This document shows, piece by piece, positions 7,867 to 59,592 of a DNA stretch of 64,000 nucleotides. The translations under genes and the position numbers were made by a program. The stretch spans positions 124,001 through 188,000 of IMG/VR virus record IMGVR_UViG_3300004463_000226. One strand, written 5' to 3'. How positions within the stretch are numbered: the first letter of the stretch is position 1; each line of letters starts with the position of its first letter. The notes beneath the pieces were generated by a model. That model searched no databases. It was not told the DNA's origin and worked only from the letters and a program-made list of their open reading frames with translations.

Positions 7867-9594
7867 TTAGTTTGTACCTTGGTCAGCTTTAATTGAAATG
7901 TACTGGTTACTGCTCAATAATAATGCAACGATAGACGTAGCAGCACGTAAGATTTCAACATCTGTATGACAAGGGTTAATTACATCAGCCGAATAAGTAT
8001 CTGTGATTAAATCATAGCACAGTTCCTTTTCAATGGCTTCATCTACAATTCCATGTAGGAATGCTTCTGGCTCTGTAGTGTATTTTCTACCTAATACTTT
8101 AGTAAATACCTCACAGAAAGCTGCACGTAGAAGCATAAGAATGTTTTGCTCAACGCATACTTCTTTGTATTGTGTTTCAAGAAGATGGTCGATTGCAATA
8201 GGAATAATAAGGTTTCCACCAATATTATATCCATAGTGATAAGCTGATTCACATGCTTTAACAGCATCTTCAACTAGATCATAATTACTTGCTTTTTCAA
8301 GCCCAGATTGTCCACCAACATGAATAACACCCATGATTCCTTTTAGCTTAGATAGACGTTTCTTTACTTCATATAGCTGGGAATCAACGATATTCAACTC
8401 TTGGTGAGTTTGCTCAAGTTTGCTGAACTTAGCGCGAGCATCACGCAATGCTACTTGATACATTTCCTCATTGCGGTTATAGAAACCTCTAATAAGTGTT
8501 GTATCTGGTCCAACAGCAATACTATCTACTTGACCAAGGAATGAAGATATATCTGGTACTTTTTCAGGATCTTCAGAATTAAATGCATATACATCAGTAT
8601 CACGAATAATCATACCACCAGTCATGATAGCAAAATCATTGAACTGTTCTTGGAATAGATTACTTGATAACATAGCGCGTGTATATACAACTGCTGTAGT
8701 TCCATGTTGATGCATTTGTTGATTCGCTTGAGTGCGAATATGGTTAAGCATAAATGAATCGAAGTGTGGTGCAATTACCACTAAGCGACGACCTTCGTGA
8801 ACTGCAAGAGACATTGCTTTATAGATGATTGTATTGTAGTGCGACTCAAGGTCAACCTTATGGTCGAACATTAGAATCAGCGGCTTGTTAATGTTACAGA
8901 TTCCATCATCATTGGTTGCATAGATTGCATCTAGGTACGTAATTAAGGCTTTATAGCCTTCAACGATTTCATATGTAGTCTTTGCAGACCGAGCTTTAAT
9001 GAACTCAATAGATGGATTTTCTGTTTCTTTGTAAATAGTGCGGATGATATCTGAAACCTCAGTATCGCCGTTAGTTGAAATCATCGCTAAACGATAGATT
9101 TCATCAAGATCTGGAGACCCAGCCGCATCAATTTTAGTAGAGCGATTAAGAACTTCGCCTGTAATAGATTCTACTGCACGTTTAAGAGAATCAATTACTT
9201 CTTTAGGGCGAACCTTCTTAAGTTGCTCGCTACTTTCAAGTTTTTTAAGAATAGAGTTAGCTGCTACGATAGAAGATGTACTACCGTCACCAACTTTAAT
9301 TACAACTTGTGCGCTGATATTAACCAGCAGTTGAAGAAGGTTTTGCTCTGTTGGATCGTCAAATGAAATCTTTTTAAGGATATTCCAGCCGTCCTTTGTA
9401 ATATGCATTTCACCGAATTTTTCAATGATAGCTGTAGCACCGTAAGGTCCTAATGTATTAGTTAGCATAGTTGCAACCTGATCAAATACGTTGCGAACGC
9501 GTGCTCTAAATTGGGTCTCTTCAATAACATTCCAGTTTAATGACTTTTTATAGTTTTTTGGTAAAAAAGTTTCACTTAAAGTAGGTTCAGCCAT
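7867..9594 (-). CDS. groEL: GroEL-like phage chaperonin
   Basis: TLGPYG, ITKDGWNIL, KVGDGSTS, EDAVKA motifs; 575 aa; no GGM tail. Confidence 0.93.
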   Translation of the reverse strand: MAEPTLSETFLPKNYKKSLNWNVIEETQFRARVRNVFDQVATMLTNTLGPYGATAIIEKFGEMHITKDGWNILKKISFDDPTEQNLLQLLVNISAQVVIKVGDGSTSSIVAANSILKKLESSEQLKKVRPKEVIDSLKRAVESITGEVLNRSTKIDAAGSPDLDEIYRLAMISTNGDTEVSDIIRTIYKETENPSIEFIKARSAKTTYEIVEGYKALITYLDAIYATNDDGICNINKPLILMFDHKVDLESHYNTIIYKAMSLAVHEGRRLVVIAPHFDSFMLNHIRTQANQQMHQHGTTAVVYTRAMLSSNLFQEQFNDFAIMTGGMIIRDTDVYAFNSEDPEKVPDISSFLGQVDSIAVGPDTTLIRGFYNRNEEMYQVALRDARAKFSKLEQTHQELNIVDSQLYEVKKRLSKLKGIMGVIHVGGQSGLEKASNYDLVEDAVKACESAYHYGYNIGGNLIIPIAIDHLLETQYKEVCVEQNILMLLRAAFCEVFTKVLGRKYTTEPEAFLHGIVDEAIEKELCYDLITDTYSADVINPCHTDVEILRAATSIVALLLSSNQYISIKADQGTN

Positions 9595-10966: not shown

Positions 10967-11123
10967 CTCTAATATCCATTAATGATTTTCTAAGTCCGTC
11001 AGGATCTGATGTAAGTTCATTGTTAGCCGCAATAACAACAAGCTTATCAACATCTGAAGTACTTAATTGTTTAATAGCATTGATAATTTCCATCGGTTTT
11101 GTGAAATCTACCATATTATCCAT
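10932..11123 (-). CDS. small hypothetical protein
   Basis: Start moved to MDNMVDF (SD AAGGGG). Confidence 0.65.
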   Translation of the reverse strand: MDNMVDFTKPMEIINAIKQLSTSDVDKLVVIAANNELTSDPDGLRKSLMDIRGESSDPNAQRI

Positions 11124-11180
11124 CCCCTTATAAAAAAATAAAAGAGCTATAATGAAATCAATCATTATAGCCCTCGGTTA

Positions 11181-11999
11181 TTAGAACATTCCCTGAAGCT
11201 CGTCAAGGTTATTTAATTTGCTGATAGGTGCATTGCCACCATCTAAATCAACTGGTTCGTTGCTTTTGCTACCACCATCAGAGAAAATATCTTTAGTTTT
11301 GTATCCGCCACCATTACCATTAGAGTAAGATTTAGATTTACCTTCTACTCCTAGTTTAGCAGCAATATCGCCAAGGTCATTGATTAGGCGGTCACGGAAC
11401 CATTTGTCGCTTACTTTGATAGAGTGAGCTGTTGCATATGTTAATGCTTCGATAGATGCTTCCAATGCAGACAAGAATAACATGAATTCGCTTGGAATAC
11501 CTTTTGTAATTGTATAGTTACCTGTTTCAGGATCATAGTCATCAATACTATAGCTAGATTTAAATTGATACAGCATTTGTGCTTCAGGCTTTTTAGTTTC
11601 CTCATCTAGGTTTTTAAAGATGGTAATGTATGCTATTTGCTCACCACCACGCTGCTCAGTACCAATACCTAGAATTGAGTTACCGCCTACTTTAACAAAG
11701 CGGGATTTTTTAGTACCTTCGTTATAAGCTGGAAGGATGCTTTCCTTACCAAATTTGAGTATCGCTTGTGCTTTTTCCAATGTAAGTGCTGTAGAAAGAA
11801 CCTCATCATAATTAAAGCGGCTAGATTCAGTTTGTTTATCTTCTGGTAATGCTGGATGAATTTTAATAGAAACCATGCTGTTCCAATATCCATATACCAG
11901 AGTAGAAGCCATTACTGTGCTTTCACCATTCATAAACTGAAGACCACGAGAGTTAATATTTACAGCATCACGATTATTAGATTGATTATTGAATTTCAT
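11181..11999 (-). CDS. probable single-stranded DNA-binding protein
   Basis: Beta-rich N-domain, Gly/Ser linker, acidic tail ending in Phe (LDELQGMF), the usual SSB architecture; inference only. Confidence 0.45.
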   Translation of the reverse strand: MKFNNQSNNRDAVNINSRGLQFMNGESTVMASTLVYGYWNSMVSIKIHPALPEDKQTESSRFNYDEVLSTALTLEKAQAILKFGKESILPAYNEGTKKSRFVKVGGNSILGIGTEQRGGEQIAYITIFKNLDEETKKPEAQMLYQFKSSYSIDDYDPETGNYTITKGIPSEFMLFLSALEASIEALTYATAHSIKVSDKWFRDRLINDLGDIAAKLGVEGKSKSYSNGNGGGYKTKDIFSDGGSKSNEPVDLDGGNAPISKLNNLDELQGMF

Positions 12000-12013
12000 T
12001 TGTTAGTTTCCTC

Positions 12014-12745
12014 CTAGATTTGCTTTGTTTTTATAATAGGAACAATTTTAGTAGAATAGCTTGATTTCGGACCTTGAGAAAGACTCTTCTGTATATTATC
12101 ACATAGAACCGCACCATAATGTTGTCTATCAATATATACTGTATGAATTGCTGGGTCATTTTCAATTTGAGATACTAGAAAATCAACTGCTAGATTTAAA
12201 GCCTTGAACTTTCTAATTTCTGTACTAAATTTTCTAGATACTTTATCAATAATCATAATATTAAAAGAACAATCTAGACGGTTATCACCAATAAAGAAAT
12301 CTGTTATGATATAATCCTTGAGCCTATTCTTACCTAAAATATCAAGACTCAAGTTAGTTAAATCCTTCAGTGTACATGAGCACCAGATATCTAGAACAAC
12401 CAGTTCAGCAGTCTCGTCATTTTCAATCTGAGTAATAACCGAACGATGTTCAAATCGAACTGGTTTCATATCCATTAATAGATTACCATATAACAAAAGC
12501 CCATCGTCAGCGTATGATGACAGCTTTAATACTGTATCGTCAGTAGAATTTTTCCACTGATCAGCAAGCTTAATCATAGGAGAATCTATAAATTCATAAA
12601 CAGTCATTTTTGTTTCAGTTGGTTCTCCAATTGTAGCTGAACCGTCAACAAATATGCAAGCTTTAGCCATAGTATCCATTAACTTATGTTGCTCTGGACT
12701 CATATCTTTAGGTTTCTTAATAAAGTCAAAAGTGGTTACTGCCAT
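12014..12745 (-). CDS. protein whose C-terminal ~80 aa resemble the TerL RNase H-like nuclease domain (truncated)
   Basis: IMIIDKVSRKFSTEIRK...AVDFLVSQI...VYIDRQHYGAVLCD aligns with TerL ITVIDPYTLKPVAEFKS...AVKFVRTMI...MAIERNNVGTAIID. Confidence 0.6.
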   Translation of the reverse strand: MAVTTFDFIKKPKDMSPEQHKLMDTMAKACIFVDGSATIGEPTETKMTVYEFIDSPMIKLADQWKNSTDDTVLKLSSYADDGLLLYGNLLMDMKPVRFEHRSVITQIENDETAELVVLDIWCSCTLKDLTNLSLDILGKNRLKDYIITDFFIGDNRLDCSFNIMIIDKVSRKFSTEIRKFKALNLAVDFLVSQIENDPAIHTVYIDRQHYGAVLCDNIQKSLSQGPKSSYSTKIVPIIKTKQI

Positions 12746-12766
12746 TTAGTTACCCTCCTTTTTCAT

Positions 12767-12778
12767 TACTATAAAGTT
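12767..12778 (-). promoter_or_regulatory. putative variant promoter AACT-N6-TA
   Basis: AACTTTATAGTA ahead of nuclease-like/SSB operon. Confidence 0.55.
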
Positions 12779-12805
12779 TAGAGAGTTTTAACTTATTATT
12801 TAGAC

Positions 12806-13105
12806 TTAGATATTTAGGTTCACATGCATTGGTCCTGCGTATTCTGTGCGATACTGCTCTTCTCTTTCTTTAAGGAATTTCTTAGATGACTTATCAATTT
12901 TGATCTCCTTCTTTGAAACCAGATGCCTGAATGAACGAACTATTGATTCTGCTGAAGGTGCATTATTAACTTCACTTAGTGAAGATACCCCATTAAACTG
13001 CTTCCAATACTCAACGATCAACAAATTACGATTGTGTACAACATCTGGATTCTTTTCAACCAATTTCAGTAAGTTTTTACCTATGATCTCCTTGTTTTTC
13101 CCCAC
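12806..13105 (-). CDS. hypothetical protein, possible helix-turn-helix
   Basis: GTG start with SD AAGGGAG; EYW...SAESIVRSFR pattern; late motif at 13140-13151. Confidence 0.65.
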   Translation of the reverse strand: MGKNKEIIGKNLLKLVEKNPDVVHNRNLLIVEYWKQFNGVSSLSEVNNAPSAESIVRSFRHLVSKKEIKIDKSSKKFLKEREEQYRTEYAGPMHVNLNI

Positions 13106-13139
13106 TAGTAACACTCCCTTTAAGATTTTCACTTTCGTA

Positions 13140-13151
13140 TATATTATTGTT
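13140..13151 (-). promoter_or_regulatory. putative late promoter AACA-N6-TA
   Basis: AACAATAATATA ahead of 12806-13105. Confidence 0.5.
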
Positions 13152-13174
13152 TCTAGTAGGTTTATTTGCTTCAA

Positions 13175-13978
13175 TCATAACGACTTTGTAGCAGGATGTT
13201 CGATGTTTTCTCCGCCAGGAATAACTTCTCTTTTCCATACGCTGGAAACTTCAGTCACTGGACGACTATCTATTGTTTCCATAGTAGGGAAATTTTTAGC
13301 AGCTTCTTTAACGAATTCTTTTCTCAATGTTTTCATCTCTCTTGCTTTTTCCTTAGCACGTTTACGCTGTTGTTTACGTTTCTCTGTGCGAGTTAGCGGT
13401 AACTCTTTTGGTGGAGCTGGATGCATTGAAAATGCTTGTTGAGCTTCTTTGAGAAATGGACCCGTTTTAGAACCTCTACCATAGAAACCAGCCAATGAAT
13501 CAATTATGATATGTCTATGGGCATTTTCATCGTCCTCCATTTCTTTAACAGCTTCAGACAATCTCATCTTAAAATCATCAAATTCATAATGTGTGATTAT
13601 GTCACCTTCTTCCAGAGCAGCTCTAGTAAGAATTTCTGTCATAAAAGATGTTTTACCTGTACCTTGAGGTAATGGTAGTAGCTCAATACCTTCATCAGAA
13701 TTTACAAAATGTCTAGGGACATTTTCATCAACACTAGGATCTACCATTCTTTTGAGATGAGTATTTGGACCCACAATTCTATTACAGTTATCCAATATCA
13801 TTCTTTGATATTCTTTCAATCCAGGAAAATTAGGATCTTCTCCGCTCATAAATTCATAGAACTCAAAAGGTGTCATTTTACTAAAATCCTTAACACCTTC
13901 ACCAGTATCAACAATATTGATCTCTAATTCCTTATGGTTTTCACCATATAAACTTGATGCTTGAATTTCTTCTGACAT
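13175..13978 (-). CDS. hypothetical protein with minimal P-loop-like segment
   Basis: QGTGKTS ... HIIIDSL about 40 aa apart; basic coiled C-region. Confidence 0.7.
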   Translation of the reverse strand: MSEEIQASSLYGENHKELEINIVDTGEGVKDFSKMTPFEFYEFMSGEDPNFPGLKEYQRMILDNCNRIVGPNTHLKRMVDPSVDENVPRHFVNSDEGIELLPLPQGTGKTSFMTEILTRAALEEGDIITHYEFDDFKMRLSEAVKEMEDDENAHRHIIIDSLAGFYGRGSKTGPFLKEAQQAFSMHPAPPKELPLTRTEKRKQQRKRAKEKAREMKTLRKEFVKEAAKNFPTMETIDSRPVTEVSSVWKREVIPGGENIEHPATKSL

Positions 13979-14010
13979 TAAATTGTCCTCCTAGAAAATA
14001 TATTTTTTTA
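13942..14010. repeat. duplicated leader + 5' coding cassette, copy 1
   Basis: 27-nt (13942-13968) and 25-nt (13986-14010) blocks identical to 14446-14472 and 14490-14514. Confidence 0.9.
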
Positions 14011-14011
14011 A

Positions 14012-14482
14012 TTAATAAGGTAAATTGATACTTCTGTGCCGAGGTAACCTGTATCTACCATAGAAGCTATTCCTGTTGAGCATACTATGTGCATTATGTA
14101 ACGCTTCCTCATACAGTTTAACACCTTCTCTGGACACCATAACATTTCTTGCCAGTATTTTACTTTTCTTTTCAAGCATTTTAAACATGTGGTATAATGT
14201 GTGTCGATATGAGCCACGTCCTATACCGCTAGCATAAAAGTAATCATGAAACTCAGGTTTAGATATCATAGAATCAAACTTTCTTCTCATAGCATCTCTG
14301 TCTTTCTCATTCCAATGAATACCTGCATATAGACGTAAATTTTCTTCAGGTAAAGATTTATCATATGGAAATCCATAACCAAAACCCCAGCTATTATAAA
14401 TTGCTCGTAGTGAAATTTCTGTAGCCGAAAGTCTTTTTACAGACCCACCATATAAACTTGATGCTTGAATTTTTTTCGACAT
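14012..14482 (-). CDS. hypothetical protein; N-terminus shared with 13175-13978 gene
   Basis: MSKKIQASSLYG vs MSEEIQASSLYG; duplicated leader DNA. Confidence 0.75.
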   Translation of the reverse strand: MSKKIQASSLYGGSVKRLSATEISLRAIYNSWGFGYGFPYDKSLPEENLRLYAGIHWNEKDRDAMRRKFDSMISKPEFHDYFYASGIGRGSYRHTLYHMFKMLEKKSKILARNVMVSREGVKLYEEALHNAHSMLNRNSFYGRYRLPRHRSINLPY

Positions 14483-14514
14483 TTTAATATCCTCCTAGAA
14501 AATATATTTTTTTA
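14446..14514. repeat. duplicated leader + 5' coding cassette, copy 2
   Basis: Identical blocks to copy 1. Confidence 0.9.
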
Positions 14515-14659
14515 CTATTGATGGTAAGATAAGTATAAGAACTAAGATGATGTATATTAACAAACGATGTCTAAATAGAAACTCCCATGATAGGATCACA
14601 CACTTCATGATGTAGTTAAACACGAATGGTATAGTATGATACGGATTCAACCATTTCAT
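14495..14659 (-). CDS. small membrane protein (54 aa), absent from ORF track
   Basis: Manual translation MKWLNPYHTIPFVFNYIMKCVILSWEFLFRHRLLIYIILVLILILPSIVKKYIF; ATGA overlap with upstream stop; SD GAGGT; fills the gap. Confidence 0.7.
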   Translation of the reverse strand: MKWLNPYHTIPFVFNYIMKCVILSWEFLFRHRLLIYIILVLILILPSIVKKYIF

Positions 14660-15039
14660 TTTCTTGACCTCTTATATCTTTTACTGCTCTTTCCACTATT
14701 ATAATATATATTTGATTGCTGGTATGATGCATGTTTTTGATAACTTTCTGTACCTAAGAACTTATGAATAGTATTCTTATACTTTGCTTTCTTCTCGGTA
14801 TAAGCATAATACTTCATTAACGGCTGTATTTTATTCACATAGTATGAACTAATAGGAGCGAATGCTTTTATGACAAACTCCTTTATTTTATTCCAAGCGT
14901 CCATGATAAATGCAGCAGCTTTTTTAAGATATTCTTTCATATCATCTATTTGACTAGATAATTCTGGCTGAGATGCTTTTAGTTTCTCTATAGCATCTTC
15001 AAATACTTCATTAGTTGAGGAATTAATATTTGTTTCCAT
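14656..15039 (-). CDS. hypothetical protein
   Basis: ORF with SD GGAGAG. Confidence 0.7.
   Translation of the reverse strand: METNINSSTNEVFEDAIEKLKASQPELSSQIDDMKEYLKKAAAFIMDAWNKIKEFVIKAFAPISSYYVNKIQPLMKYYAYTEKKAKYKNTIHKFLGTESYQKHASYQQSNIYYNSGKSSKRYKRSRK
14701..14710 (-). promoter_or_regulatory. possible internal early promoter motif
   Basis: Exact motif inside CDS, about 40 nt before the 54-aa ORF; could be chance. Confidence 0.35.
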
Positions 15040-15090
15040 TCTGATCTCTCCAATCCTAACATTAATATGAAGGGGATGTTAATATAGATA

Positions 15091-15118
15091 AGATACAGTA
15101 CCAAACGGTACTGTATCT
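15091..15118 (-). terminator. terminator after polymerase operon
   Basis: agatacagtacc-aaac-ggtactgtatct. Confidence 0.75.
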
Positions 15119-15126
15119 CTACATTT

Positions 15127-15414
15127 TTATTTTACTTCTTTAACTAGATGAATTGGTAATAAATTAGCGATGCGTTGCTCAAATACGAACTCCAATGCTT
15201 CAACTACCCTTCTAACATCATTTATATTATTTATATTATCTGTATTAATGGTATATAGCTTCGGTGGCTGAACAATTCCTACTTTAATACCCCTCTGTGC
15301 ATATTCATATATTATTTGCGCATTACTCTTATCTTTATACCAGGAATCCCCTGGTCTTTCTTCAGGAGACTCACCTTCAACATATGGTTTAAATGGATTG
15401 TCTTCACTCATCAT
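15127..15414 (-). CDS. hypothetical protein
   Basis: ORF with SD GGAGGA after the polymerase gene. Confidence 0.7.
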   Translation of the reverse strand: MMSEDNPFKPYVEGESPEERPGDSWYKDKSNAQIIYEYAQRGIKVGIVQPPKLYTINTDNINNINDVRRVVEALEFVFEQRIANLLPIHLVKEVK

Positions 15415-15423
15415 TATTCCTCC

Positions 15424-17361
15424 TTATACTCGTAAGATATTTGTAAAATATTTCTTATCAGAAGCTTTGATAGTTTCAACACCTAATGCCTCTAATACCG
15501 AATAGAAACGTGAAATGTTATCATTCACAATTGTATCATAGTCGATATAAGGCAATAACCATTCAGGTATTGATTCAACACTTCTTGGGATTGCAATGAT
15601 TTGAACACCTTTCTCAACAAGCTTCTTATTATTACCATTAAACACATGCTTCATCAATCTATCATACGCTTCTGGGAAAACTTTCTTTAAAGGTTCAATA
15701 TGCTCAGGCTTTGTCATCTTAACTTTGACAATATCAATCTTCTCAGGTAACTGTATAGCAAGACTTGGATAGATGATATTCCAAGCAAGTACTCCTCGAA
15801 CACCTTGCTCCTTATAAGGGTCTTTGTATGCTTCTATCTCTTTAACTGACTTAGGAATTAAGAAACTCTTTTCACCTTTATGTAGAGATTCCTGAATTAT
15901 TCCCTCAAGCTTTTCTAGTTCCCTTAATACAGATGAGATACTAATATCATCTTTATATAACAATTCCTTCTTCACTAGATTAATAAAGTAAGCTTTTGTT
16001 TCCTCCCGTGTAGATGACTTAACAAAATCCATTCCTTTGATATCAATCTTCTCAGGATAAATCTCATGACCCTCACGAAGACGCACACTACTGATATATC
16101 TCTTCTTACTACCAGAAAGTATCAATCGTGTAAATAAGAATTCGTTCTTCATGTTAATCTTAGGTCTGAATTCTTTCAAGATATTTGAATCCTTGGTATA
16201 CTTCTTAAGTACATCTGTAACCATGTTTGTCAGGAAATAACACATCATATTGATACTGATGAATCGTAACTCCATAGGATCTCTTTCTAATAGATGGTCG
16301 TTTACAGATATAACATTGCGATTGATAAACTTAACCCAAGGATCTAAATTCAACATGTTTGAGTCTGTGTCTACAGTTACTACAACTTTACGTTTATCAT
16401 TCTTCAGACGTTGAATACGTCCAAAAGGTGAATGATTATAGAATACAAACTCTTTATAATAGTCCCATAAGTCCTCTAAGTTACTTTGCACATTCTTAGG
16501 AACCTTATTTGGATCCTTAAATGACTCTGTTTTATTAACAGCTGTGACTATCTTATATCGTATCTTACGAAGATATGAGAACTTATAGATGTTATTCTTA
16601 AAGTAGATACGATTAATAATATTCTGAGGTAAACTCATCAAGTACTCAAATAAGATAAATTCATACTCAGGTTTAAACTCATAGAAAGAATCTGCCAGAT
16701 GGTCAATTAGTTTCTCAATAGAAACATTGGGCAAGAAACCATCATCTTTAATATGTTTCTCCCTACGAACATTTTCCAAAAACATCATACAATCATCAAG
16801 GTCAATAAACGGTACGTTGTTTGCTAAGAATGCTTCAAACGCTTGTTGCGTTGTACTGATAAGCGATTGACCTGTTGCTGTTACTGATGTTGCGGTATAA
16901 AGATTAAAGAAGTTAGATGTTGGTGCACCAGATGCTCCATAATATGAGTTAGCATTAATCTTTTCTGTTAATTGCATTCGGTCTAATGCCATGTAATCAT
17001 AAGAGCCTTCTTGATGATCTGGTAACTGATTCTTATAAAACTTACGTAACTTAAGGAAGTTATCTAACATGACAGCGGCAGGATTTAATACTTGGTCTTG
17101 ATTCCAGAAGAATACTCCAAAACCTGCTGCTATTGCATTGGTATTTCTAAACCAATCAATCATTGATAATAAATCTACATCTATGTCTAAGTGATTATAG
17201 TTATTATGCATAGATGCTTTTGGATTCACTAGCCGTTCTTTAATAACTTCGTCCAGGAATCCTTTTATTTCTTTCTTTTTTAATTCAGGATACATCGTTG
17301 TGAATATCCTAGTGTAGTGCTTTTTCCAATCTTCGAGAAATATATGACTCTTCTCTCCCAT
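15424..17361 (-). CDS. family B DNA polymerase, C-terminal subunit (motifs B and C)
   Basis: KINANSYYGA, VTVDTDSN, KKRY, KGMDFVKSS; lacks exonuclease and motif A. Confidence 0.92.
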   Translation of the reverse strand: MGEKSHIFLEDWKKHYTRIFTTMYPELKKKEIKGFLDEVIKERLVNPKASMHNNYNHLDIDVDLLSMIDWFRNTNAIAAGFGVFFWNQDQVLNPAAVMLDNFLKLRKFYKNQLPDHQEGSYDYMALDRMQLTEKINANSYYGASGAPTSNFFNLYTATSVTATGQSLISTTQQAFEAFLANNVPFIDLDDCMMFLENVRREKHIKDDGFLPNVSIEKLIDHLADSFYEFKPEYEFILFEYLMSLPQNIINRIYFKNNIYKFSYLRKIRYKIVTAVNKTESFKDPNKVPKNVQSNLEDLWDYYKEFVFYNHSPFGRIQRLKNDKRKVVVTVDTDSNMLNLDPWVKFINRNVISVNDHLLERDPMELRFISINMMCYFLTNMVTDVLKKYTKDSNILKEFRPKINMKNEFLFTRLILSGSKKRYISSVRLREGHEIYPEKIDIKGMDFVKSSTREETKAYFINLVKKELLYKDDISISSVLRELEKLEGIIQESLHKGEKSFLIPKSVKEIEAYKDPYKEQGVRGVLAWNIIYPSLAIQLPEKIDIVKVKMTKPEHIEPLKKVFPEAYDRLMKHVFNGNNKKLVEKGVQIIAIPRSVESIPEWLLPYIDYDTIVNDNISRFYSVLEALGVETIKASDKKYFTNILRV

Positions 17362-18767: not shown

Positions 18768-18777
18768 ATAATATATA
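18768..18777 (-). promoter_or_regulatory. putative early promoter motif
   Basis: Heads operon containing ClpX-ZBD and polymerase C-subunit. Confidence 0.7.
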
Positions 18778-21483: not shown

Positions 21484-21493
21484 ATAATATATA
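21484..21493 (-). promoter_or_regulatory. putative early promoter motif
   Basis: Intergenic, ahead of 20750-21442. Confidence 0.7.
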
Positions 21494-35735: not shown

Positions 35736-36971
35736 ATGACTGTAATTACTAAAAGTCCAGATATGATATTAATGGAACAAATGTTCACCAACATTAAGTC
35801 TGGTAAAGATGTTGACATTAGCTTAAGAACTATTGAACGGGTTCTAGCACGTAACTTTGGTTTAGAGTTCAATATAACTTTGATTGATAACAAGACGAAG
35901 AATTTCTTTGGTATGAGTGTATATCCTAGTAGAAATTTAATTGATACTATGGTAGATCAAATCATTAATAAGAAAGCTCATTCTGATGTTATTGAGAAGT
36001 TATGGTCTGAAAATAAGAAATGGTATCTTGAAATTGATAGTATACTTGTTAACGACCCTTCATTAAATGCAAATCCAGCTGAAATGGTTGCTGTGTTATT
36101 GCATGAGGTTGGTCATGTAACTCAATCTAATAGAATCCCTTCTCGGATTCATAAAGTATTGAGATATGAAATAATGCAGTTATCATTATCTATGAAGAAA
36201 TTAATTAAATGGAAAAAGTGTCAAATTCTTTTTGACTTAATCTTCGCTGAGGCATGTGGATCTAAAAACTTCAGTTTACATCGTGAAATTGAAGCTGATA
36301 AATTCGCTGCTAAATTTGGCTATGGTGAGAATCTTCGTCAGTTTATTGAGAAGCTATTAACTACTCAAGGTAACTCGATGATTGATCGTAGTGAGACAGA
36401 TATGGAAAAAGATGTTAAAGCAATTGTTACATGGACATTTGTTAATATCAGTGAGCTTGAATATCGTAAGACTAAATTACGTGAAATGCTTCAGACTGAA
36501 ATTTTACAGAGTCCTAGTAAATATATCCGTAATCTTGTATTCAATATTAAAACTGTATTCTTCGGTGGCAGTGACGAAAACAGTTATAAGGAAATTATCA
36601 ATGAACAGTATCTTGTTCAACAGCACCAATCTATTGTCAAAGAGGGTCTACTCGACTTATTTGATAAATACGGTAAATTGAAAAAGATCACTCAGAGTGA
36701 TATTGATATCATTCAAATAGAGAAAGACCGTATCTCAAATGAAGATGATAAAATCTATGTATTAGATCTTATCTATGACAAACTGGATCAAATCAATGCA
36801 GGCTTACAACTCATTGATCAAAATAAAAAGGACAAAGTCGTAGTATCTAAAGATAGACTCAATGGATACAAAACACAACTAGAGAAACTTCGTAAAGAAG
36901 TGTTGGCAACTAAGATTAAGGAAAAACAGTACGGCTTATTCGTCCAATATCCTGTAGGATATGAAGGGTAG
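35736..36971 (+). CDS. late protein with zincin (HExxH) metallopeptidase-like motif
   Basis: VLLHEVGHV and EIEADKFAAKFGYG. Confidence 0.65.
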   Translation: MTVITKSPDMILMEQMFTNIKSGKDVDISLRTIERVLARNFGLEFNITLIDNKTKNFFGMSVYPSRNLIDTMVDQIINKKAHSDVIEKLWSENKKWYLEIDSILVNDPSLNANPAEMVAVLLHEVGHVTQSNRIPSRIHKVLRYEIMQLSLSMKKLIKWKKCQILFDLIFAEACGSKNFSLHREIEADKFAAKFGYGENLRQFIEKLLTTQGNSMIDRSETDMEKDVKAIVTWTFVNISELEYRKTKLREMLQTEILQSPSKYIRNLVFNIKTVFFGGSDENSYKEIINEQYLVQQHQSIVKEGLLDLFDKYGKLKKITQSDIDIIQIEKDRISNEDDKIYVLDLIYDKLDQINAGLQLIDQNKKDKVVVSKDRLNGYKTQLEKLRKEVLATKIKEKQYGLFVQYPVGYEG

Positions 36972-36981
36972 GTAATCGAAT

Positions 36982-39051
36982 ATGGTGGAGACTCCTAAAC
37001 AAAAGCGACGACCGTTTATTTATCACATTAAAACAAGAAATATTTCTTTCTTACAAACAGCTCGTGACTTAAAAGCTTTAGGTATTAAGAACAACATGTT
37101 CTTCTTAAAGCTTTATGATACGTCATTAGAATTTGTAGATCCTCATTCACCACATCTAACACACGAACAAACACTAAGAGTTATCAATGAATGTATTATC
37201 AATCCTTGGTATTTCTTACGTGAATGTGTTCGTATACCTGAGCAAGGCGGTAATGGTATCCCGTATCAATTACACCGTGCTAACTTAGCAGCAACTTTTT
37301 GTTTCTTGATGGGTATTGACCATTATTTGGTAATTCCTCGTCAGAAAGGTAAGACACAATCAACTGTTTCTTCTTTAAATTGGGCATTCCTATTCGGTAC
37401 TACAAGTTCCGAGTTCATGTTTATCAATAAACGTCAAGAGGATGCTAATAACAACCTTGACCGTCTAAAACAACAACGGGAATTACTCCCTTCATATATG
37501 CGTATGAAGGAGATTATTAACGATGACGGTAAACGTGAAGTAGGTCAAGATAACGTTAAGTCTATCACGAACCCTACAACAGGTAACAAAATTGTTACTA
37601 AACCTTCTGCCCGTTCTGTAGAAGCTGCTGAGGGATTAGGACGTGGTTGCACTCAACCAATTCAGTATTATGATGAGACCGAATTTACTCCGTTCATCAA
37701 AACAATTATTGAGGCTGCTGGTCCAGCATACAATACTGCATCGGCTAACGCTAGACGAAACAATGCGGCATATTGCCGTATCTTCACATCAACTCCTGGT
37801 GACTTAGATACACAGCCAGGGCAAGACTGTGCTCTTATCATTAATGAAACTTGTAAATGGACCGAGCAATTCTATGACTGGTCTAGAGATGATATTGAAG
37901 ATTACATTGCTAAAAACTCTGGTAATGGTATTGTCTATATCGAATACCAATACCAACAACTAGGTGATGATGAAGAATGGTTCAAACGTACTTGTCAAAC
38001 CCTATTAAATAACCCTGCTAAAATTAAGCGTGAAATTTTCTTACAACGTATGCGTGGTTCTTCTGAATCTCCATTTGAAACTGAAGATCTAAATGCTGTA
38101 CAGGAGTTAAAAGGTAAAGTATTAGAAGAAATCTTTATTAATAAATTATTCAAGTTAGATATTTATGAAAAACTTGATAGAAATAAAGTATACCTAGCTG
38201 GTATGGACTGTGCTGGAGGTCTTGGTGAGGATAATACTGCTATTACAGTAATTGATCCTTATACATTGAAACCTGTAGCTGAATTTAAATCTCCATACAT
38301 TGGTATACCTGATGCTGTTAAATTTGTACGTACAATGATTAGAAAATACATCCCTAGATGTATTATGGCTATAGAGCGAAATAACGTTGGTACAGCTATT
38401 ATTGACGGTCTTCGTGAAACAGATGTACGTGCTAATATTTACTTTGATGATTCTAAAGATTTCATTGAAGTTGATGATAAATTAGATCCGCAAGGATTCT
38501 TAGCTAGACAAGCGGCTAGACGTAAACTATACGGTGTATGGACTGGTCCTAAATCCCGTGATATCATGTTTACTATTCTAGAAGCTCATATGGCTGAATA
38601 CAAAGATAAGTTCGTTACTGAGAATATTATCAATGACTTAGTGAGTCTTATCCGTAAAAAGAATGGACGTATTGAACATGCACCAGGATTCCATGATGAC
38701 TCATTATTCTCATATCTAATTGGTCTCTATGTTTACTATCATGGTAAGAATCTACATAGATTCGGATTCGTTAGAGGTCAATTACCTGATGAAGAGCAAC
38801 AAAATAAGGGATTAACTTATGAAGAAATCTTTAATGAAATGCCTGAAGAAATGAAACAAGCTTTTGCTAACTTTAGTGTTAAAACTGAAGATGATTACAG
38901 TGCTAAGATACGGGCTGAGATAGATGCTGCTAGAAGAGAAGTTCAGTATGTAAATTCTATTCTTAAACCTACGAATCTGGCTGAAAACTTTGATGAGCTT
39001 GAATATGAAGCAGATATACCATTAAGTTTCTTCGATGATTTAAATAATTAG
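36982..39051 (+). CDS. terL: terminase large subunit
   Basis: Walker A PRQKGKT, Walker B YYDETE, IFTST, nuclease AGMDCAGGLGED, AIERNNVG, HDDS. Confidence 0.92.
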   Translation: MVETPKQKRRPFIYHIKTRNISFLQTARDLKALGIKNNMFFLKLYDTSLEFVDPHSPHLTHEQTLRVINECIINPWYFLRECVRIPEQGGNGIPYQLHRANLAATFCFLMGIDHYLVIPRQKGKTQSTVSSLNWAFLFGTTSSEFMFINKRQEDANNNLDRLKQQRELLPSYMRMKEIINDDGKREVGQDNVKSITNPTTGNKIVTKPSARSVEAAEGLGRGCTQPIQYYDETEFTPFIKTIIEAAGPAYNTASANARRNNAAYCRIFTSTPGDLDTQPGQDCALIINETCKWTEQFYDWSRDDIEDYIAKNSGNGIVYIEYQYQQLGDDEEWFKRTCQTLLNNPAKIKREIFLQRMRGSSESPFETEDLNAVQELKGKVLEEIFINKLFKLDIYEKLDRNKVYLAGMDCAGGLGEDNTAITVIDPYTLKPVAEFKSPYIGIPDAVKFVRTMIRKYIPRCIMAIERNNVGTAIIDGLRETDVRANIYFDDSKDFIEVDDKLDPQGFLARQAARRKLYGVWTGPKSRDIMFTILEAHMAEYKDKFVTENIINDLVSLIRKKNGRIEHAPGFHDDSLFSYLIGLYVYYHGKNLHRFGFVRGQLPDEEQQNKGLTYEEIFNEMPEEMKQAFANFSVKTEDDYSAKIRAEIDAARREVQYVNSILKPTNLAENFDELEYEADIPLSFFDDLNN

Positions 39052-39940: not shown

Positions 39941-41032
39941 ATGGAAGAAACTAACGTAATTGGAGTAGATTTTGGAAAAGGTGAAGATTCTACAGGAGTA
40001 AAAGTATATCCGAATTTAAATACTGATTATGTAGATGGAGCACATGCAACTGATTTTGTTACACCTCAGGTATTAAACGCTGAATCTATGGCTGAACAAG
40101 GAATGACTGTAGCAATCGCTGGTAGAGGATCCGCTGTAACTGTTGAGCAAGCTAGAAATATCCTTGGAGCACATGAGCAAATTAATTTAATTAATACAAT
40201 GCGTGATGAAATGAAAAAAAATAAACTGCAAGTACTCGGCAATGATGACCTTGCACAAAAAATCAGTGATAAAATTTCACACTTGAACCCAGCTGCAATT
40301 GCTGCTCTTACTGATGAGCAAGTTAGAGAGTTTTATACTGATGAAAACGGCGAAATGGAATTTGATCTTGAAATGACTAAAGGTCATAGTGAGATTGAGT
40401 TCAAGCGTGATTTCTTAGTATATCTTCGTGAAACTGATATTGCTGACAAATCTTTTGACGAGCAAATGGATACTCTACAAGCCAGCATTAAAGAGTATCA
40501 AGATGAATTAAATACATTGCTTTCTGACTATGGTGATTTAAGTGCATTTATGCGCAGCAAATTACAGGAAGAGTATGATGCGGCTGCTCCTGAACGTAAG
40601 GAGAAATTACTCCTAATCATGGATGCTTATGATGATTCATATACATTGGACCGTGTGTTAGAACACTTCCAAAAGTTCGGTCGTAATGTTCTTAACGATT
40701 ATAAACATCGCCCTGATGCTTTGTATAAAAAATTTGTCAAAGCTACAAAAGAGTTAAAACTTAAAGCTGACTTCTCAGCATTCAACAATGTTGAGAAAAA
40801 CTTCTTAGAAGAGAAGTACCAGCAGTATCCTAATCTATTTATGTTCTTAGTAATTAAGATGTATGCACAAAAGAAGGATCTTACAAACAATGTTGACGGT
40901 GTATTCTTGTCTCAAGTGGCTGTTAACTTGAAATCTTTATATGCTAATTCTTTCGGATCTGAAGAAAAGAAACAAGGATTCTTAAATGCAATCCGCAAAG
41001 TATTGGATCTTTTCGTTGAGGATGCTGAATAA
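39941..41032 (+). CDS. late hypothetical helical protein
   Basis: ORF after late motif; N-terminal VIGVDFGKGEDSTG. Confidence 0.8.
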   Translation: MEETNVIGVDFGKGEDSTGVKVYPNLNTDYVDGAHATDFVTPQVLNAESMAEQGMTVAIAGRGSAVTVEQARNILGAHEQINLINTMRDEMKKNKLQVLGNDDLAQKISDKISHLNPAAIAALTDEQVREFYTDENGEMEFDLEMTKGHSEIEFKRDFLVYLRETDIADKSFDEQMDTLQASIKEYQDELNTLLSDYGDLSAFMRSKLQEEYDAAAPERKEKLLLIMDAYDDSYTLDRVLEHFQKFGRNVLNDYKHRPDALYKKFVKATKELKLKADFSAFNNVEKNFLEEKYQQYPNLFMFLVIKMYAQKKDLTNNVDGVFLSQVAVNLKSLYANSFGSEEKKQGFLNAIRKVLDLFVEDAE

Positions 41033-42714: not shown

Positions 42715-44580
42715 ATGCCGCAAGTAGGACAAATCATTCCTAGCTACCTACAACCGCATACGATGACTGTCATCAATGATAACACTGTGTTTCAAGAAGA
42801 TCAGTTACCATCGGTAGTTGTAGAAGAACTAGTCCGTTCAGCGTTTGTTTTTGTATCCGCTAAAGGACGTGATGGCGTAGTTTTAGAAAAAACGAATGAA
42901 CCAGACTTCCTTGAAGAGTATGGTATTCCAAACTTTAAACTTCATGGACAGCCTATCTATAATGCCCATGCATTCGTATCCCAGGATCAAACTAAGGGAT
43001 GGTGCATGCGTGTTATGCCGCCAGATGCAACATATTCAAACCTTTGTATCGTGGCTAAGGTAAAAGTTGATACAACTATTCCTGCTACTCCACGTTTAAT
43101 CATTCGGTTTGAAGCATTGCAGCACAATGGCATCGATTCTATTGAAGATTTCTCAGCAGTAACTGACCTTTTAACATCTACAACTCCTGACGTTGATGGA
43201 TTCCGCACATATCCTTTAATGACGTTCTATAGCTTAGGACGCGGTGTATATGGTGATGGATTCCGTATGCGTATTACTGGAGCTACACAAGAGGATATTG
43301 CAACAGGTTTCAGAAACTATCGTTTCGAAGTTCTTGAACTTGAAAATACTATCTCTCAAAAAGAATCTTTCACAGGTGCTGTTTATCCAGCTGCTATCAA
43401 AGATAAACTTTCAATCTACATTTCTGACTTGATCCTTGATCCTGAAGCAGGAAGTTCTAAGATTGGTGTATATCTTGTTGAAGATAGCTTCTCAGCAATC
43501 TATGATATCTATAAAGAACAAGTGCGCACTAACACAACAATCACTGAAGATCAATTCAGCATTCTTACAGGTCTTAATTCAGACCTTACTACAATTGATG
43601 GTGTTGTTTTCGATACATCAAACAGTGCACACGTACCATTAGATGCTCCTGAAGGCATTCCTCTTTCTGGAGGTAATGATGGAGCTTTCACTTACGATGT
43701 AGCTAACTTGGCTGCTCGTGAAACAGCGATTGACACAGCTTACTCTGCTGCATTCCGTGGAACATCGAATCGTACTCTTTTGAGTAAACATCGTACACCA
43801 TGTGATTTCATTCTTGATGCAGGATATTCTGATGAAGTTAAACGCGACCTTGTAGCATTACTAACTCGTCGTTATGATGCATTAGGTCACATTGATGGTG
43901 GAATTTTGAATACTGCTACTGATGCTATTACATGGGGTACTTCCATAGCTTCATTATCTGACAGAGTATTCACTAAACAATTCCAACATTACAAAGTCCG
44001 CGATCCATTTAGCGGCAGACCAATTCCAGTTACTATTACTTATTACTTTGCGCAAAATCTTGCTCGTCATATCTTGGATAATGGAATTCATACTCCATTC
44101 ATCGGCGAAGCATTTGCACCGTTAACTGGAGCAATTAAAAACTCTCTTCGTCCTGTTATTGACGCTGATGATTTGGACCTTAAAGAACAGTTCTACAAGC
44201 TTCGCTTGAATTATTTCCAAGCTATTGCTGAGAACACATTTGTTCGTGGTACTCAAACAACATCTCAGGATGTATGGTCAGATCTTTCTGAAGAAAATAA
44301 TATGGGAACTCTACTTGAAATGAAACGTATGGTTGAAGGCTTAGTTGATGGTTTAACATATAACTTTGCTGATGCTGACGATCGTTCAGAGTTCACTGCT
44401 GATGCAAACCGTTTATTCGCAGATGGTTATGTTGGTACTAAAGTAGAAACTGCTTCTGTTACATTCAGCATGACTAAATGGGAAGAAGAACGCAGTATCA
44501 TTCACTGCTACCTAAATGTAGTATTCCGTACATTAGGTAAACGCTCTATTGTTGAGATCGACATCAACAAACGAGTATAA
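42715..44580 (+). CDS. tail sheath protein
   Basis: N-terminal PHTMTVINDN, LSGGNDG, DFILDAGY, C-terminal domain with SIVEIDIN. Confidence 0.88.
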   Translation: MPQVGQIIPSYLQPHTMTVINDNTVFQEDQLPSVVVEELVRSAFVFVSAKGRDGVVLEKTNEPDFLEEYGIPNFKLHGQPIYNAHAFVSQDQTKGWCMRVMPPDATYSNLCIVAKVKVDTTIPATPRLIIRFEALQHNGIDSIEDFSAVTDLLTSTTPDVDGFRTYPLMTFYSLGRGVYGDGFRMRITGATQEDIATGFRNYRFEVLELENTISQKESFTGAVYPAAIKDKLSIYISDLILDPEAGSSKIGVYLVEDSFSAIYDIYKEQVRTNTTITEDQFSILTGLNSDLTTIDGVVFDTSNSAHVPLDAPEGIPLSGGNDGAFTYDVANLAARETAIDTAYSAAFRGTSNRTLLSKHRTPCDFILDAGYSDEVKRDLVALLTRRYDALGHIDGGILNTATDAITWGTSIASLSDRVFTKQFQHYKVRDPFSGRPIPVTITYYFAQNLARHILDNGIHTPFIGEAFAPLTGAIKNSLRPVIDADDLDLKEQFYKLRLNYFQAIAENTFVRGTQTTSQDVWSDLSEENNMGTLLEMKRMVEGLVDGLTYNFADADDRSEFTADANRLFADGYVGTKVETASVTFSMTKWEEERSIIHCYLNVVFRTLGKRSIVEIDINKRV

Positions 44581-44613: not shown

Positions 44614-45471
44614 ATGGCTACTACTACAGTTAAAGATAAATCTACGTTACAATCCAATATTAAGCAGGCTGCTACTAATATGCAAGCATATTCACTGTTT
44701 CTTGGCGGATTAAACGTACGTAGTGAAGTGTTGGCACAATTCACGCCATTGAAAACTGGTTATGCTCGTATCTTCCTAGTTAAGATGCCAGTGTTCATGC
44801 AAAAACAGTTTCCTAATAAAACAAAAACATTCAAACACTTAGTTGAGTATGGATTCGTTGGTGTAGACGGTATCCAAAACTTGACAATGGACTTTGAACA
44901 AGTTACAGGTGGTTATGCAGCTCGTCAGTTTGATGTTGCTACTGTAGCTAAAGATGAAACAAATGAAATCACTGTCAAAATGTATGAATTCTCTGGTTCT
45001 CCAACTCGTGAATACATTGACATGTGGATGACTGGTGTTTCTGACCCAATGACAGGTATTGCTCACTATCATGGTGCAATGGACCTTGACAAAGCACCCG
45101 TTAAATTAAACCAAGCAAACCATACAATGGAAGCAATCTACGTACAGACTGATGCGTCTGGACGCCATGATGCTGTTGAGTATGCTTGTATGATTGCTAA
45201 CATGATGCCTAAACAGTCTAAAAAGGATCACTTCAACTATGAGGCTGGTACTCACTCTCTAGTTCAAACTGATGTTCCTTTTACAGCTGTTAAATATGAA
45301 TCTCGTCAAATCAATGACATCGCTGAGGCATTGGTTAAACGTTTCGCTCTTCGTCGTAACTTCTTATCGTTCCAATCTGGATACATTGATACGACTGAGC
45401 AAAAAACGCCACCAGAAAAGAAACTCGTTACGGATGTTCGCTACATGCCACGTCCATCTCTTGTCTGGTAA
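44614..45471 (+). CDS. tail tube protein
   Basis: Directly after sheath; EITVKMYE..GSPTREYIDMWMTG pattern. Confidence 0.75.
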   Translation: MATTTVKDKSTLQSNIKQAATNMQAYSLFLGGLNVRSEVLAQFTPLKTGYARIFLVKMPVFMQKQFPNKTKTFKHLVEYGFVGVDGIQNLTMDFEQVTGGYAARQFDVATVAKDETNEITVKMYEFSGSPTREYIDMWMTGVSDPMTGIAHYHGAMDLDKAPVKLNQANHTMEAIYVQTDASGRHDAVEYACMIANMMPKQSKKDHFNYEAGTHSLVQTDVPFTAVKYESRQINDIAEALVKRFALRRNFLSFQSGYIDTTEQKTPPEKKLVTDVRYMPRPSLVW

Positions 45472-59501: not shown

Positions 59502-59592
59502 TGATTCACCTCGATCCCATCATAAAAATAAGAGCACTGGTTCATAAACCCCAATGTTCTTATTTTATAGTTGACGCCTAAATTATAATTTA

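What the first reader, a model, noticed from the sequence alone, without database searches (positions are those of the whole stretch)
12014..12745. Stand-alone, truncated terminase nuclease-like domain
Seen: residues ~162-218 align with one gap to the TerL RNase H-like core of this same genome (IMIIDKVSRKFSTEIRK-FKALNLAVDFLVSQIENDPAIHTVYIDRQHYGAVLCDNI vs ITVIDPYTLKPVAEFKSPYIGIPDAVKFVRTMIRKYIPRCIMAIERNNVGTAIIDGL). A preceding YIITD..G..D parallels YLAGMD..G..ED. The protein stops before the C-terminal HDD catalytic Asp and has an unrelated ~140-aa N-domain. It is the first gene of the operon with the probable SSB. Inference: a duplicated TerL nuclease domain, probably inactive.
Basis: partly seen in the sequence, partly recalled or inferred. 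Interest (0 to 1): 0.72.

Follow-up and report, generated by a model that had tools for sequence, protein, structure and literature searches.

The report
Orphan tail-tube/terminase-nuclease chimera protein
A one-of-a-kind accessory gene of a phiKZ-like jumbo phage seems to encode a fusion of two badly eroded, truncated copies of late-gene folds (a tail tube core and a terminase-type RNase H-like nuclease core lacking its last catalytic element); this is a curious case of domain reuse, and its function is still unknown.

Summary
The ORF (window 12014-12745, minus strand, 243 aa) is real. It has a strong Shine-Dalgarno site and phage-typical codon usage, and identical copies occur in several rhizosphere metagenomes. 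It has no detectable homologue among 1.84 billion protein representatives.

The fold-level idea does hold. Two independent predictors give residues ~140-243 an RNase H-like b1-b2-b3-a1-b4-a2-b5 core. Its nearest shapes in phage-containing libraries are terminase nuclease domains. Motifs YxxxD..GDN and IDRQxxG parallel invariant TerL motifs at the same spacing. The protein ends before the final catalytic His-Asp.

The N-domain is not "unrelated". It resembles the phage's own tail tube protein family (Phage_TTP_14) in predicted fold and in a weak but above-chance sequence signal (p~3e-4; best non-self hit of 685 ORFs).

The gene lies in a hypervariable island between PolB and the conserved SSB-like gene. 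It is absent from all relatives and is not the first gene of a unit.

Most likely it is a non-catalytic binding or mimic protein. Nuclease activity is not excluded.

The parts
12014..12745 (-). ORFan gene, 243 codons plus TAG stop
   Evidence: ORF listing and translation. Codon-usage log-likelihood is 0.25 bit/codon against 0.29+-0.08 for long genes, and all five other frames are negative. Identical copies occur on 4 contigs. No homologue was found in 1.84e9 representatives.
12753..12760 (-). Shine-Dalgarno site AAGGAGGG, about 8 nt before the ATG
   Evidence: Read directly from the sequence.
12332..12745 (-). N-domain, residues 1-138: truncated tail-tube-protein-like core
   Evidence: ESM Atlas structure search returns tail tube, Hcp and TssD families at TM by query 0.59-0.75, the best being Phage_TTP_14. 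Against a TTP-family HMM, 1 of 3000 shuffles scores as high. It is the best non-self hit of 685 genome ORFs.
12509..12625 (-). Residues 41-79: ungapped match to the conserved YEFxGSPx5DxW...D...Y segment of the tail tube family
   Evidence: phmmer, hmmsearch and hhalign alignments. Residues Y50 E51 F52 S55 P56 D62 W64 D70 Y78 match columns conserved in 95-120 of 120 homologues.
12017..12331 (-). C-domain, residues 139-243: RNase H-like core (b1-b2-b3-a1-b4-a2-b5), terminase-nuclease-like, with no element after b5
   Evidence: AF2 model mf437c5f21ca0 and fold searches. ESM Atlas part search.
12281..12313 (-). Y145-IIT-D149-FFI-G153-D154-N155: parallels TerL Y404..D409..G413..D417-N418; D149 lies in predicted b1
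   Evidence: TerL family invariants and AF2 secondary structure. Motif level only, and post hoc.
12113..12133 (-). I205-D206-R207-Q208-H-Y-G211 at the end of predicted b4: parallels the invariant TerL I464-E465-R466-N467-x-x-G470
   Evidence: The combined pattern D...G.{45,60}[DE]R[NQ]..G occurs only in TerL and in this ORF among 686 ORFs (post hoc).
11181..11999 (-).
   Evidence: Orthologues in 11 related loci at E 1e-42 to 1e-68. The 14-nt spacer has its SD overlapping the target's stop. No family assignment.
12000..15423 (-). Hypervariable accessory island between PolB and the SSB-like gene; holds the target and five other small genes
   Evidence: The gap is 0.5-4.3 kb and carries different cargo in each relative. 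An internal 82-nt repeat is present.
15090..15119 (-). Terminator-like hairpin upstream of the island genes, followed by a weak variant of the promoter-like motif (about 15086)
11142..11175 (-). Terminator-like hairpin just after the SSB-like gene
36982..39051 (+). The phage's TerL (comparator; possible source of the C-domain)
   Evidence: phrog_32359 at 3e-58 and phrog_2 at 6e-30. 120 homologues.
44614..45471 (+). The phage's tail tube protein (comparator; possible source of the N-domain)
   Evidence: PF23806 Phage_TTP_14 at E=1.1e-14, above cut-off. It follows the sheath gene 42715-44580.

Best explanation
P0001 is a lineage-specific accessory protein of a phiKZ-like jumbo phage. It appears to be built from two strongly diverged, truncated domains of late-gene type. 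The N-terminal part is the core of a tail tube protein of the phage's own Phage_TTP_14 family; it corresponds roughly to TTP residues 75-212 and lacks both terminal arms. The C-terminal part is a terminase-type RNase H-like nuclease core. It keeps the b1 Asp (D149), the loop Asp-Asn (D154-N155) and the b4 carboxylate (D206), but it stops before the helix that carries the last catalytic His-Asp.

The gene sits in a hypervariable island and is transcribed together with replication genes. Its stop codon overlaps the SD of the conserved SSB-like gene.

Inferred mechanism: neither domain is complete enough for its original job of tube polymerisation or two-metal DNA cleavage. The protein therefore most likely acts by binding. 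It may be a mimic or competitor of the tail tube and TerL surfaces, or a DNA-binding module, rather than a packaging nuclease.

What is shown: gene reality, orphan status, genomic context, the predicted folds and the motif retention. What is inferred: origin by duplication of the phage's own genes, loss of catalysis, and the binding or mimic role. For that last step alone I give about 0.4.
For: Gene reality: strong SD, phage-typical codon usage in one frame only, identical copies in several samples.

Motifs sit at the right structural places and with matching spacing: D149 to D206 is 57 residues, against 56 for TerL D409 to E465.

N-domain: structural look-alikes are tail tube, Hcp and TssD families, the best being Phage_TTP_14 at TM 0.75. 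The phage's own tube protein belongs to that family. The family HMM ranks the target first of 685 non-self ORFs. The shuffle test gives p about 3e-4 and hhalign P=0.0044. Nine conserved family residues are kept without a gap. The best hit of P0001 among 1215 ORFs of related loci is also their tube protein.

Context: the island is variable and the gene is absent from relatives whose PolB is 50-68% identical.
Confidence: 0.5

Rival explanations
1. It is an active structure-specific nuclease (RuvC- or RNase H-like) that works with the polymerase and the SSB-like protein in replication or recombination. The missing carboxylate would be dispensable or supplied elsewhere.
For: RNase H-like fold. Acidic residues D149, D154 and D206 lie at canonical positions. 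The gene is coupled to a conserved replication-cluster gene. A relative (L007 13255-13725) carries a canonical-looking RNase HI in the same island.
Against: The protein ends 8 residues after b5, with no acidic residue there. All close relatives lack it, so it is not a core replication function. It has no significant similarity to any nuclease family. The island's cargo is functionally heterogeneous, so position says little.
Confidence: 0.18
2. It is an early-made mimic (decoy) of two conserved late proteins. It would occupy or blunt host pattern-recognition defences that sense the tail tube protein or TerL, or interfere with assembly of a competing phage.
For: Both domains resemble proteins that defence sensors are reported to recognise: TerL by Avs1-3 (PDB 8dgc appears), tail tube protein by Avs16 (PMC13581612) and by DSR2 (PMC10981675). 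Both domains are truncated cores unlikely to do their original jobs. The gene has ORFan status, sits in a hypervariable island and lies in a non-late gene array.
Against: This is purely circumstantial. The host and its defences are unknown (rhizosphere metagenome). I found no phage-encoded protein decoy of this kind in the papers searched. Truncated targets can still activate Avs sensors (PMC13581612), which would harm the phage.
Confidence: 0.12
3. The resemblances are generic or artefactual. On this view the C-domain is some other RNase H-like or merely a/b domain, the N-domain similarity is chance, and the protein is an unrelated ORFan or a decaying relic without function.
For: Sequence statistics against TerL are at chance. 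The models are single-sequence and of moderate confidence. Full-length AF2 failed and produced meaningless hits. Language-model predictors may favour common phage folds.
Against: Two different predictors agree on the C-domain fold. The N-domain has an independent sequence signal to the same family that the structure search named. A 243-codon open frame in 33% G+C DNA, with a strong SD and native codon usage, argues for a maintained gene.
Confidence: 0.15
4. It is a tail-associated protein: a tube-like domain that joins or caps the tail tube and carries a nuclease-like passenger, by analogy with T6SS Hcp-toxin fusions.
For: The architecture, a tube-fold N-domain plus a nuclease-fold C-domain, parallels Hcp proteins with C-terminal toxin extensions (PMC8262886).
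Against: It is encoded far from the structural module, in a replication-gene array. Relatives with the same tail genes lack it. The tube-like part lacks the family's N- and C-terminal thirds.
Confidence: 0.05

Closest known systems
Large terminase nuclease domain (RNase H-like; Pfam Terminase_6C PF17289 and Terminase-T7_RNaseH-like PF22530; solved examples PhiV-1 TerL 8dgc and E217 TerL nuclease 8dkr)
   Same: Predicted b1b2b3-a1-b4-a2-b5 core. These are the nearest shapes in the ESM Atlas and BFVD. It has an Asp in b1, a G-D-N loop and a [DE]-R-[NQ]-x-x-G motif after b4, with the same spacing as in the phage's TerL.
   Different: No significant sequence similarity. No ATPase domain. It lacks everything after b5, including the last catalytic His-Asp and the C-terminal arm. 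It is encoded in a replication-gene array, not the packaging module.
Tail tube protein family Phage_TTP_14 (PF23806), the phage's own tube protein (window 44614-45471)
   Same: Predicted tube, Hcp-like fold. It retains the Y-E-F-x-x-S-P...D-x-W...D...Y segment.
   Different: Only about 138 of about 285 residues. Many family invariants are lost (T116, G128, R132, G141, G148, H151). It scores below the Pfam cut-off, is not next to the sheath gene, and is fused to a second domain.
Other RNase H-like nucleases (RuvC/YqgF, RNase HI, retroviral integrase core, Cas12 RuvC)
   Same: They share the core fold and have similar VIA-align Z (6.5-7.9) and Foldseek E-values.
   Different: No family motif (DEDD or DDE) is complete. 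The Atlas and BFVD searches rank terminases first.
T6SS Hcp proteins with C-terminal toxin extensions
   Same: Tube-fold N-domain followed by a nuclease-type C-domain.
   Different: The system, the nuclease folds and the genomic context all differ. This is an architectural analogy only.

Membership tests
TerL nuclease domain | RNase H-like core fold | tested here: met
   AF2 C-domain model and five library searches. ESM Atlas model. These are predicted structures, not solved ones.
TerL nuclease domain | Significant sequence or profile similarity to terminase nuclease families | tested here: not met
   No Pfam, PHROG or NCBIfam hit. BLASTP E=1.4. Shuffle tests give p=0.14-0.67. hhalign P=0.2.
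TerL nuclease domain | First catalytic Asp in b1 and carboxylate at the end of b4 | tested here: inconclusive
   D149 and D206 lie at those positions in the model and match TerL D409 and E465 in spacing. The alignment is not statistically supported, and 3D clustering could not be checked.
TerL nuclease domain | Third catalytic Asp after b5 (H571-D572 in this phage's TerL) | tested here: not met
   The protein ends at residue 243, 8 residues after predicted b5, with no acidic residue there.
TerL nuclease domain | Fused to an N-terminal packaging ATPase | tested here: not met
   The N-domain is tube-like and carries no Walker A motif (sequence).
Phage_TTP_14 tail tube protein | Pfam PF23806 match above the curated cut-off | tested here: not met
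   No hit for P0001:1-138 at E<=10. The phage's own tube protein scores 55 bits.
Phage_TTP_14 tail tube protein | Above-chance similarity to a family profile | tested here: met
   HMM of 120 homologues: 8.7 bits, with 1 of 3000 shuffles as high. Rank 1 of 685 non-self ORFs. hhalign P=0.0044. The signal is weak and rests on one segment.
Phage_TTP_14 tail tube protein | Tube (Hcp/gp19-like) fold | tested here: inconclusive
   Only the ESM Atlas model supports it (TM by query up to 0.75). AF2 on the full length was uninformative for this part.
Phage_TTP_14 tail tube protein | Full-length subunit (about 265-300 aa) encoded beside the sheath gene | tested here: not met
   The domain is 138 aa, aligning to about TTP 75-212. 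It is encoded about 32 kb from the sheath and tube genes.
RNase HI / RuvC / integrase | Complete DEDD or DDE catalytic set and a family profile match | tested here: not met
   No profile hit. The C-terminal catalytic helix is absent.

The most novel reading that the evidence does not exclude
A phage makes, from a non-late operon, a chimeric mimic of two of its own conserved late proteins (the tail tube core and the terminase nuclease core). The mimic acts as a decoy against bacterial pattern-recognition defences that sense those folds (Avs1-3, Avs16 or DSR2-type), or as a dominant-negative weapon against competing phages. It would have arisen by duplication and fusion of fragments of structural genes.
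Probability: 0.1. Interest if true: 0.85.

Novelty: new variant of a known kind. Interest (0 to 1): 0.45.

Why it matters
If the two-domain reading is right, this is a concrete example of a phage recycling fragments of its own virion and packaging genes into a new accessory protein. It would show gene birth by duplication, truncation and fusion inside a hypervariable island. It also gives a directly testable candidate for a protein that mimics the folds bacterial immune sensors are reported to recognise. If it is wrong, this is simply one more jumbo-phage ORFan.

Tried and rejected
- Word-indexed search of 5.8e9 proteins, exhaustive HMMER over 1.84e9 representatives, tblastn of phage records and PDB sequences returned only the protein itself.
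- A search for a syntenic orthologue in 16 related loci found none.
- Related loci via the SSB-like neighbour: none found.
- Full-length single-sequence AF2 gave pLDDT 41, and its Foldseek hits (PheRS and ACT domains) are meaningless.
- Pfam Terminase_6C does not recognise even the phage's own TerL, so its silence on the target is uninformative.
- The TerL-nuclease HMM does not find the target among genome ORFs.
- Complex prediction of the tube protein with the N-domain gave no verdict. This is not evidence either way.
- RNA runs: none was listed, so there are no expression or transcript-boundary data.
- The four contigs carrying the gene are 100% identical, so there is no polymorphism to test selection.
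- A profile of SSB-like neighbour orthologues against PDB sequences gave nothing usable.
- Sigma-70-type promoter scan: at shuffle level (26 sites found, against a mean of 23 in shuffles).
- Rejected idea: that the ORF is a non-coding artefact. Codon usage and the SD argue against it.

Full report
**The object.** Window 12014-12745 (minus strand) is an open frame of 243 codons. AAGGAGGG lies about 8 nt before the ATG. The TAG stop sits inside the AGGAGG of the next gene, which starts 14 nt downstream.

A codon-usage log-likelihood trained on the phage's long genes gives 0.25 bit/codon in this frame, against 0.29+-0.08 for the training genes. All five other frames are negative. The same sequence, 100% identical, occurs on four contigs, and at least eight rhizosphere metagenome runs hold most of the sampled words of the surrounding 4.2-kb stretch, window 11000-15200. 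I take it to be a real gene.

**The genome.** The window is part of a 234,335-bp viral contig with direct terminal repeats. It encodes:
- a tubulin and two RNA polymerase beta-like genes;
- a divergent, split family B DNA polymerase and a GroEL-like chaperonin;
- a tail sheath, and a tail tube protein of family PF23806.

This is a phiKZ-like jumbo phage.

**Orphan status.** Nothing but the protein itself was found by any of these searches:
- Pfam, PHROGs and NCBIfam;
- PDB sequences and phage records;
- a word-indexed search of 5.8 billion proteins;
- an exhaustive HMMER pass over 1.84 billion cluster representatives.

TerL is window 36982-39051, confirmed by phrog_32359 at 3e-58. The HSP scores 16.5 bits, E=1.4 for that single comparison.

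Every further test puts the similarity at chance:
- 67% of whole-protein shuffles, and 18.5% of C-domain shuffles against the nuclease half, score at least as well.
- A profile HMM of the nuclease region of 120 TerL homologues scores the C-domain at -0.6 bits, and 14% of shuffles do as well.

**The C-domain fold.** AF2 on the whole protein without an alignment was useless (pLDDT 41). AF2 on residues 136-243 alone gave pLDDT 64.6 and pTM 0.53, with this topology:

| element | residues |
|---|---|
| b1 | 143-152 |
| b2 | 159-167 |
| b3 | 172-180 |
| a1 | 183-196 |
| b4 | 200-206 |
| a2 | 207-224 |
| b5 | 231-235 |

This is the RNase H-like core. The library searches with this model gave:
- Foldseek against PDB: integrase cores, endonuclease V and RT RNase H, at E about 1e-3.
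- BFVD: 15 of the top 50 hits are named terminases, beside integrases, RNase H and RuvC.
- ESM Atlas library: the top four sets are terminase families (TM by query 0.64-0.69, rmsd about 3 A over 100-104 of 108 residues).
- AFDB clusters, which hold no viral proteins: hAT and integrase RNase H-like domains rank first, and a terminase is at rank 21.

Independently, the ESM Atlas's own model of this protein (pLDDT 0.70), cut to residues 135-243, has only terminase sets among its top ten (TM by query 0.62-0.71).

I conclude two things:
- An RNase H-like fold is well supported for a prediction.
- 'Terminase-like' is the best but not an exclusive reading.

**Motifs.** In 120 TerL homologues, Y404, D409, G413, D417, N418, E465, R466, N467, G470 and H571 are invariant or nearly so. 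The target compares as follows:

| TerL | target | place in the model |
|---|---|---|
| Y404, D409 | Y145, D149 | D149 in b1 |
| G413, D417-N418 | G153-D154-N155 | loop after b1 |
| I464-E465-R466-N467-x-x-G470 | I205-D206-R207-Q208-x-x-G211 | end of b4 |

The D-to-carboxylate spacing is 57 residues in the target against 56 in TerL. The pattern D...G.{45,60}[DE]R[NQ]..G occurs in only two of 686 ORFs of the genome, TerL and this one, and in 3e-5 of C-domain shuffles. I defined that pattern after seeing both sequences, so it is suggestive only.

The protein ends 8 residues after b5. It therefore has no counterpart of the H571-D572 element.

**The N-domain.** The ESM Atlas structure search with residues 1-138 returns tail tube, Hcp and TssD families throughout (TM by query 0.59-0.75). 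The best is a Phage_TTP_14 cluster with 129 aligned residues. The phage's own tube protein (window 44614-45471) belongs to that family (PF23806, E=1.1e-14).

The sequence evidence agrees:
- phmmer of the N-domain against all 686 genome ORFs ranks the tube protein second (E=0.046).
- An HMM of 120 tube homologues ranks the target first among 685 non-self ORFs (E=0.12).
- Only 1 of 3000 shuffles reaches its score.
- hhalign gives P=0.0044.
- The best hit of P0001 among 1215 ORFs of related loci was their tube protein too.

The ungapped match (residues 41-79 against TTP 115-152) keeps Y50, E51, F52, S55, P56, D62, W64, D70 and Y78. These columns are conserved in 95-120 of 120 homologues. Other invariants are lost. 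By this register the N-domain corresponds to about TTP 75-212, the core without either terminal third. The fold evidence here is from one predictor only.

**Context.** Sixteen related loci were fetched through PolB; eleven of them have PolB 50-68% identical, the other five 23-32%. In the 50-68% relatives whose sequence reaches that far (10 loci; L002 ends before it), the order PolB, gap, SSB-like gene, a 244-aa gene, chaperonin is conserved. The gap ranges from 0.5 to 4.3 kb and holds different cargo in each lineage:
- an HNH-type endonuclease and a radical-SAM protein (L006);
- an RNase HI and a SPOR-type protein (L007);
- an AAA ATPase (L008).

These cargo names come from my reading of the translations; only the synteny was tested. 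No relative has a homologue of the target. An 82-nt direct repeat inside the island covers the upstream region and the first 12 codons of two genes. This points to cassette shuffling.

**Operon claim.** A motif TATATATTATA, often followed by AGGTAATCAAT, lies 25-130 nt upstream of about 45 genes genome-wide. On the minus strand near the target it occurs at 18775 and 6933, with a weak variant at 15086 just after a terminator-like hairpin (15119-15090). None lies in the 60-nt spacer before the target. The next terminator-like hairpin follows the SSB-like gene (11175-11142). The target is therefore an internal gene of a longer array, not shown to be the first gene of an operon. No RNA run was listed. 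The 'SSB' label could not be verified by sequence.

**Interpretation.** The simplest account is a chimeric accessory protein made of a truncated tube-protein core and a truncated terminase-type nuclease core. Both have diverged almost beyond recognition. The native codon usage suggests long residence in this genome. Absence from relatives means either rapid divergence after an internal duplication or acquisition of an already old gene. I cannot tell which.

Neither domain retains what its parent needs: the terminal arms of tube subunits, and the last catalytic element plus the ATPase of TerL. A binding or mimic role is therefore more likely than catalysis or assembly, at about 0.4. An active nuclease stands at about 0.18, since three carboxylates remain.

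The most novel reading is a decoy for defence sensors. Such sensors are reported to recognise TerL and tail tube proteins (PMC13581612; PMC10981675). It is compatible with the data but has no direct support. A co-folding test of the N-domain with the tube protein gave no verdict.

**Verdict.** I rate this a new variant of known domain kinds. It rests on a single orphan sequence and on predictions of moderate confidence. Interest is moderate.

Noticed in passing
genome-wide; minus-strand copies in the window at 21491, 21467, 20131, 18775, 6933 and 5352; weak variant at 15086: The motif TATATATTATA, often followed by ..AGGTAATCAAT, is strongly over-represented. The 8-mer core occurs in 37 of 143 upstream regions, against 2.6 expected. 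It lies 25-130 nt before start codons of about 45 genes and is probably a phage-specific promoter class.
   Followed up: partly
window 13942-14023 and 14446-14527: An 82-nt direct repeat (84% identical) covers the upstream region, the SD and the first 12 codons of two neighbouring island genes. Both genes begin MS[EK][EK]IQASSLYG. It looks like a recombination or cassette-shuffling module.
   Followed up: no
window 12000-15423; relatives L003-L012 downstream of PolB: The interval between PolB and the conserved SSB-like gene is a hypervariable island of 0.5-4.3 kb. Its cargo is unrelated between relatives: an HNH endonuclease, a radical-SAM protein, an RNase HI (L007 13255-13725), an AAA ATPase and a SPOR-type protein.
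   Followed up: partly
window 15424-17361 and 49904-51730: The family B DNA polymerase is split into two genes about 32 kb apart, both on the minus strand: the divDNApol/polymerase part and an N-terminal part (phrog_3011).
   Followed up: no
G000 203402-203875; 197028-198314; 59015-59722 (outside the window): A tubulin (PhuZ-like) gene and two RNA polymerase beta-like genes. The phage is phiKZ-like and possibly nucleus-forming.
   Followed up: partly
window 7867-9594: A phage-encoded GroEL/Cpn60-like chaperonin (PF00118 at 1.4e-26; phrog_5725 at 4e-89), conserved in all close relatives.
   Followed up: no
window 39941-41032: A 363-aa protein between TerL and the tail genes has a weak match to the 2'-5'-oligoadenylate synthetase C-terminal domain (PF10421, E=1.3e-4, just above cut-off).
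   Followed up: no
window 35736-36971: An M48-type peptidase-like protein (PF01435, 1.2e-7) lies between the major head protein and TerL. It is a possible head-maturation protease of an unusual type.
   Followed up: no
window 36982-39051: No Pfam terminase model recognises the phage's TerL (none at E<=0.01; Terminase_6C none at E<=10). Only PHROGs recognise it, and its nuclease half matches them only weakly (phrog_24361, 5e-6). This is a very divergent TerL lineage with about 200 metagenomic homologues.
   Followed up: partly
window 11181-11999: The conserved 272-aa 'SSB' candidate has a Gly/Ser/Asn-rich linker and a hydrophobic-acidic C-terminal tip, but no detectable family or PDB relative. 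Its identity remains open.
   Followed up: partly
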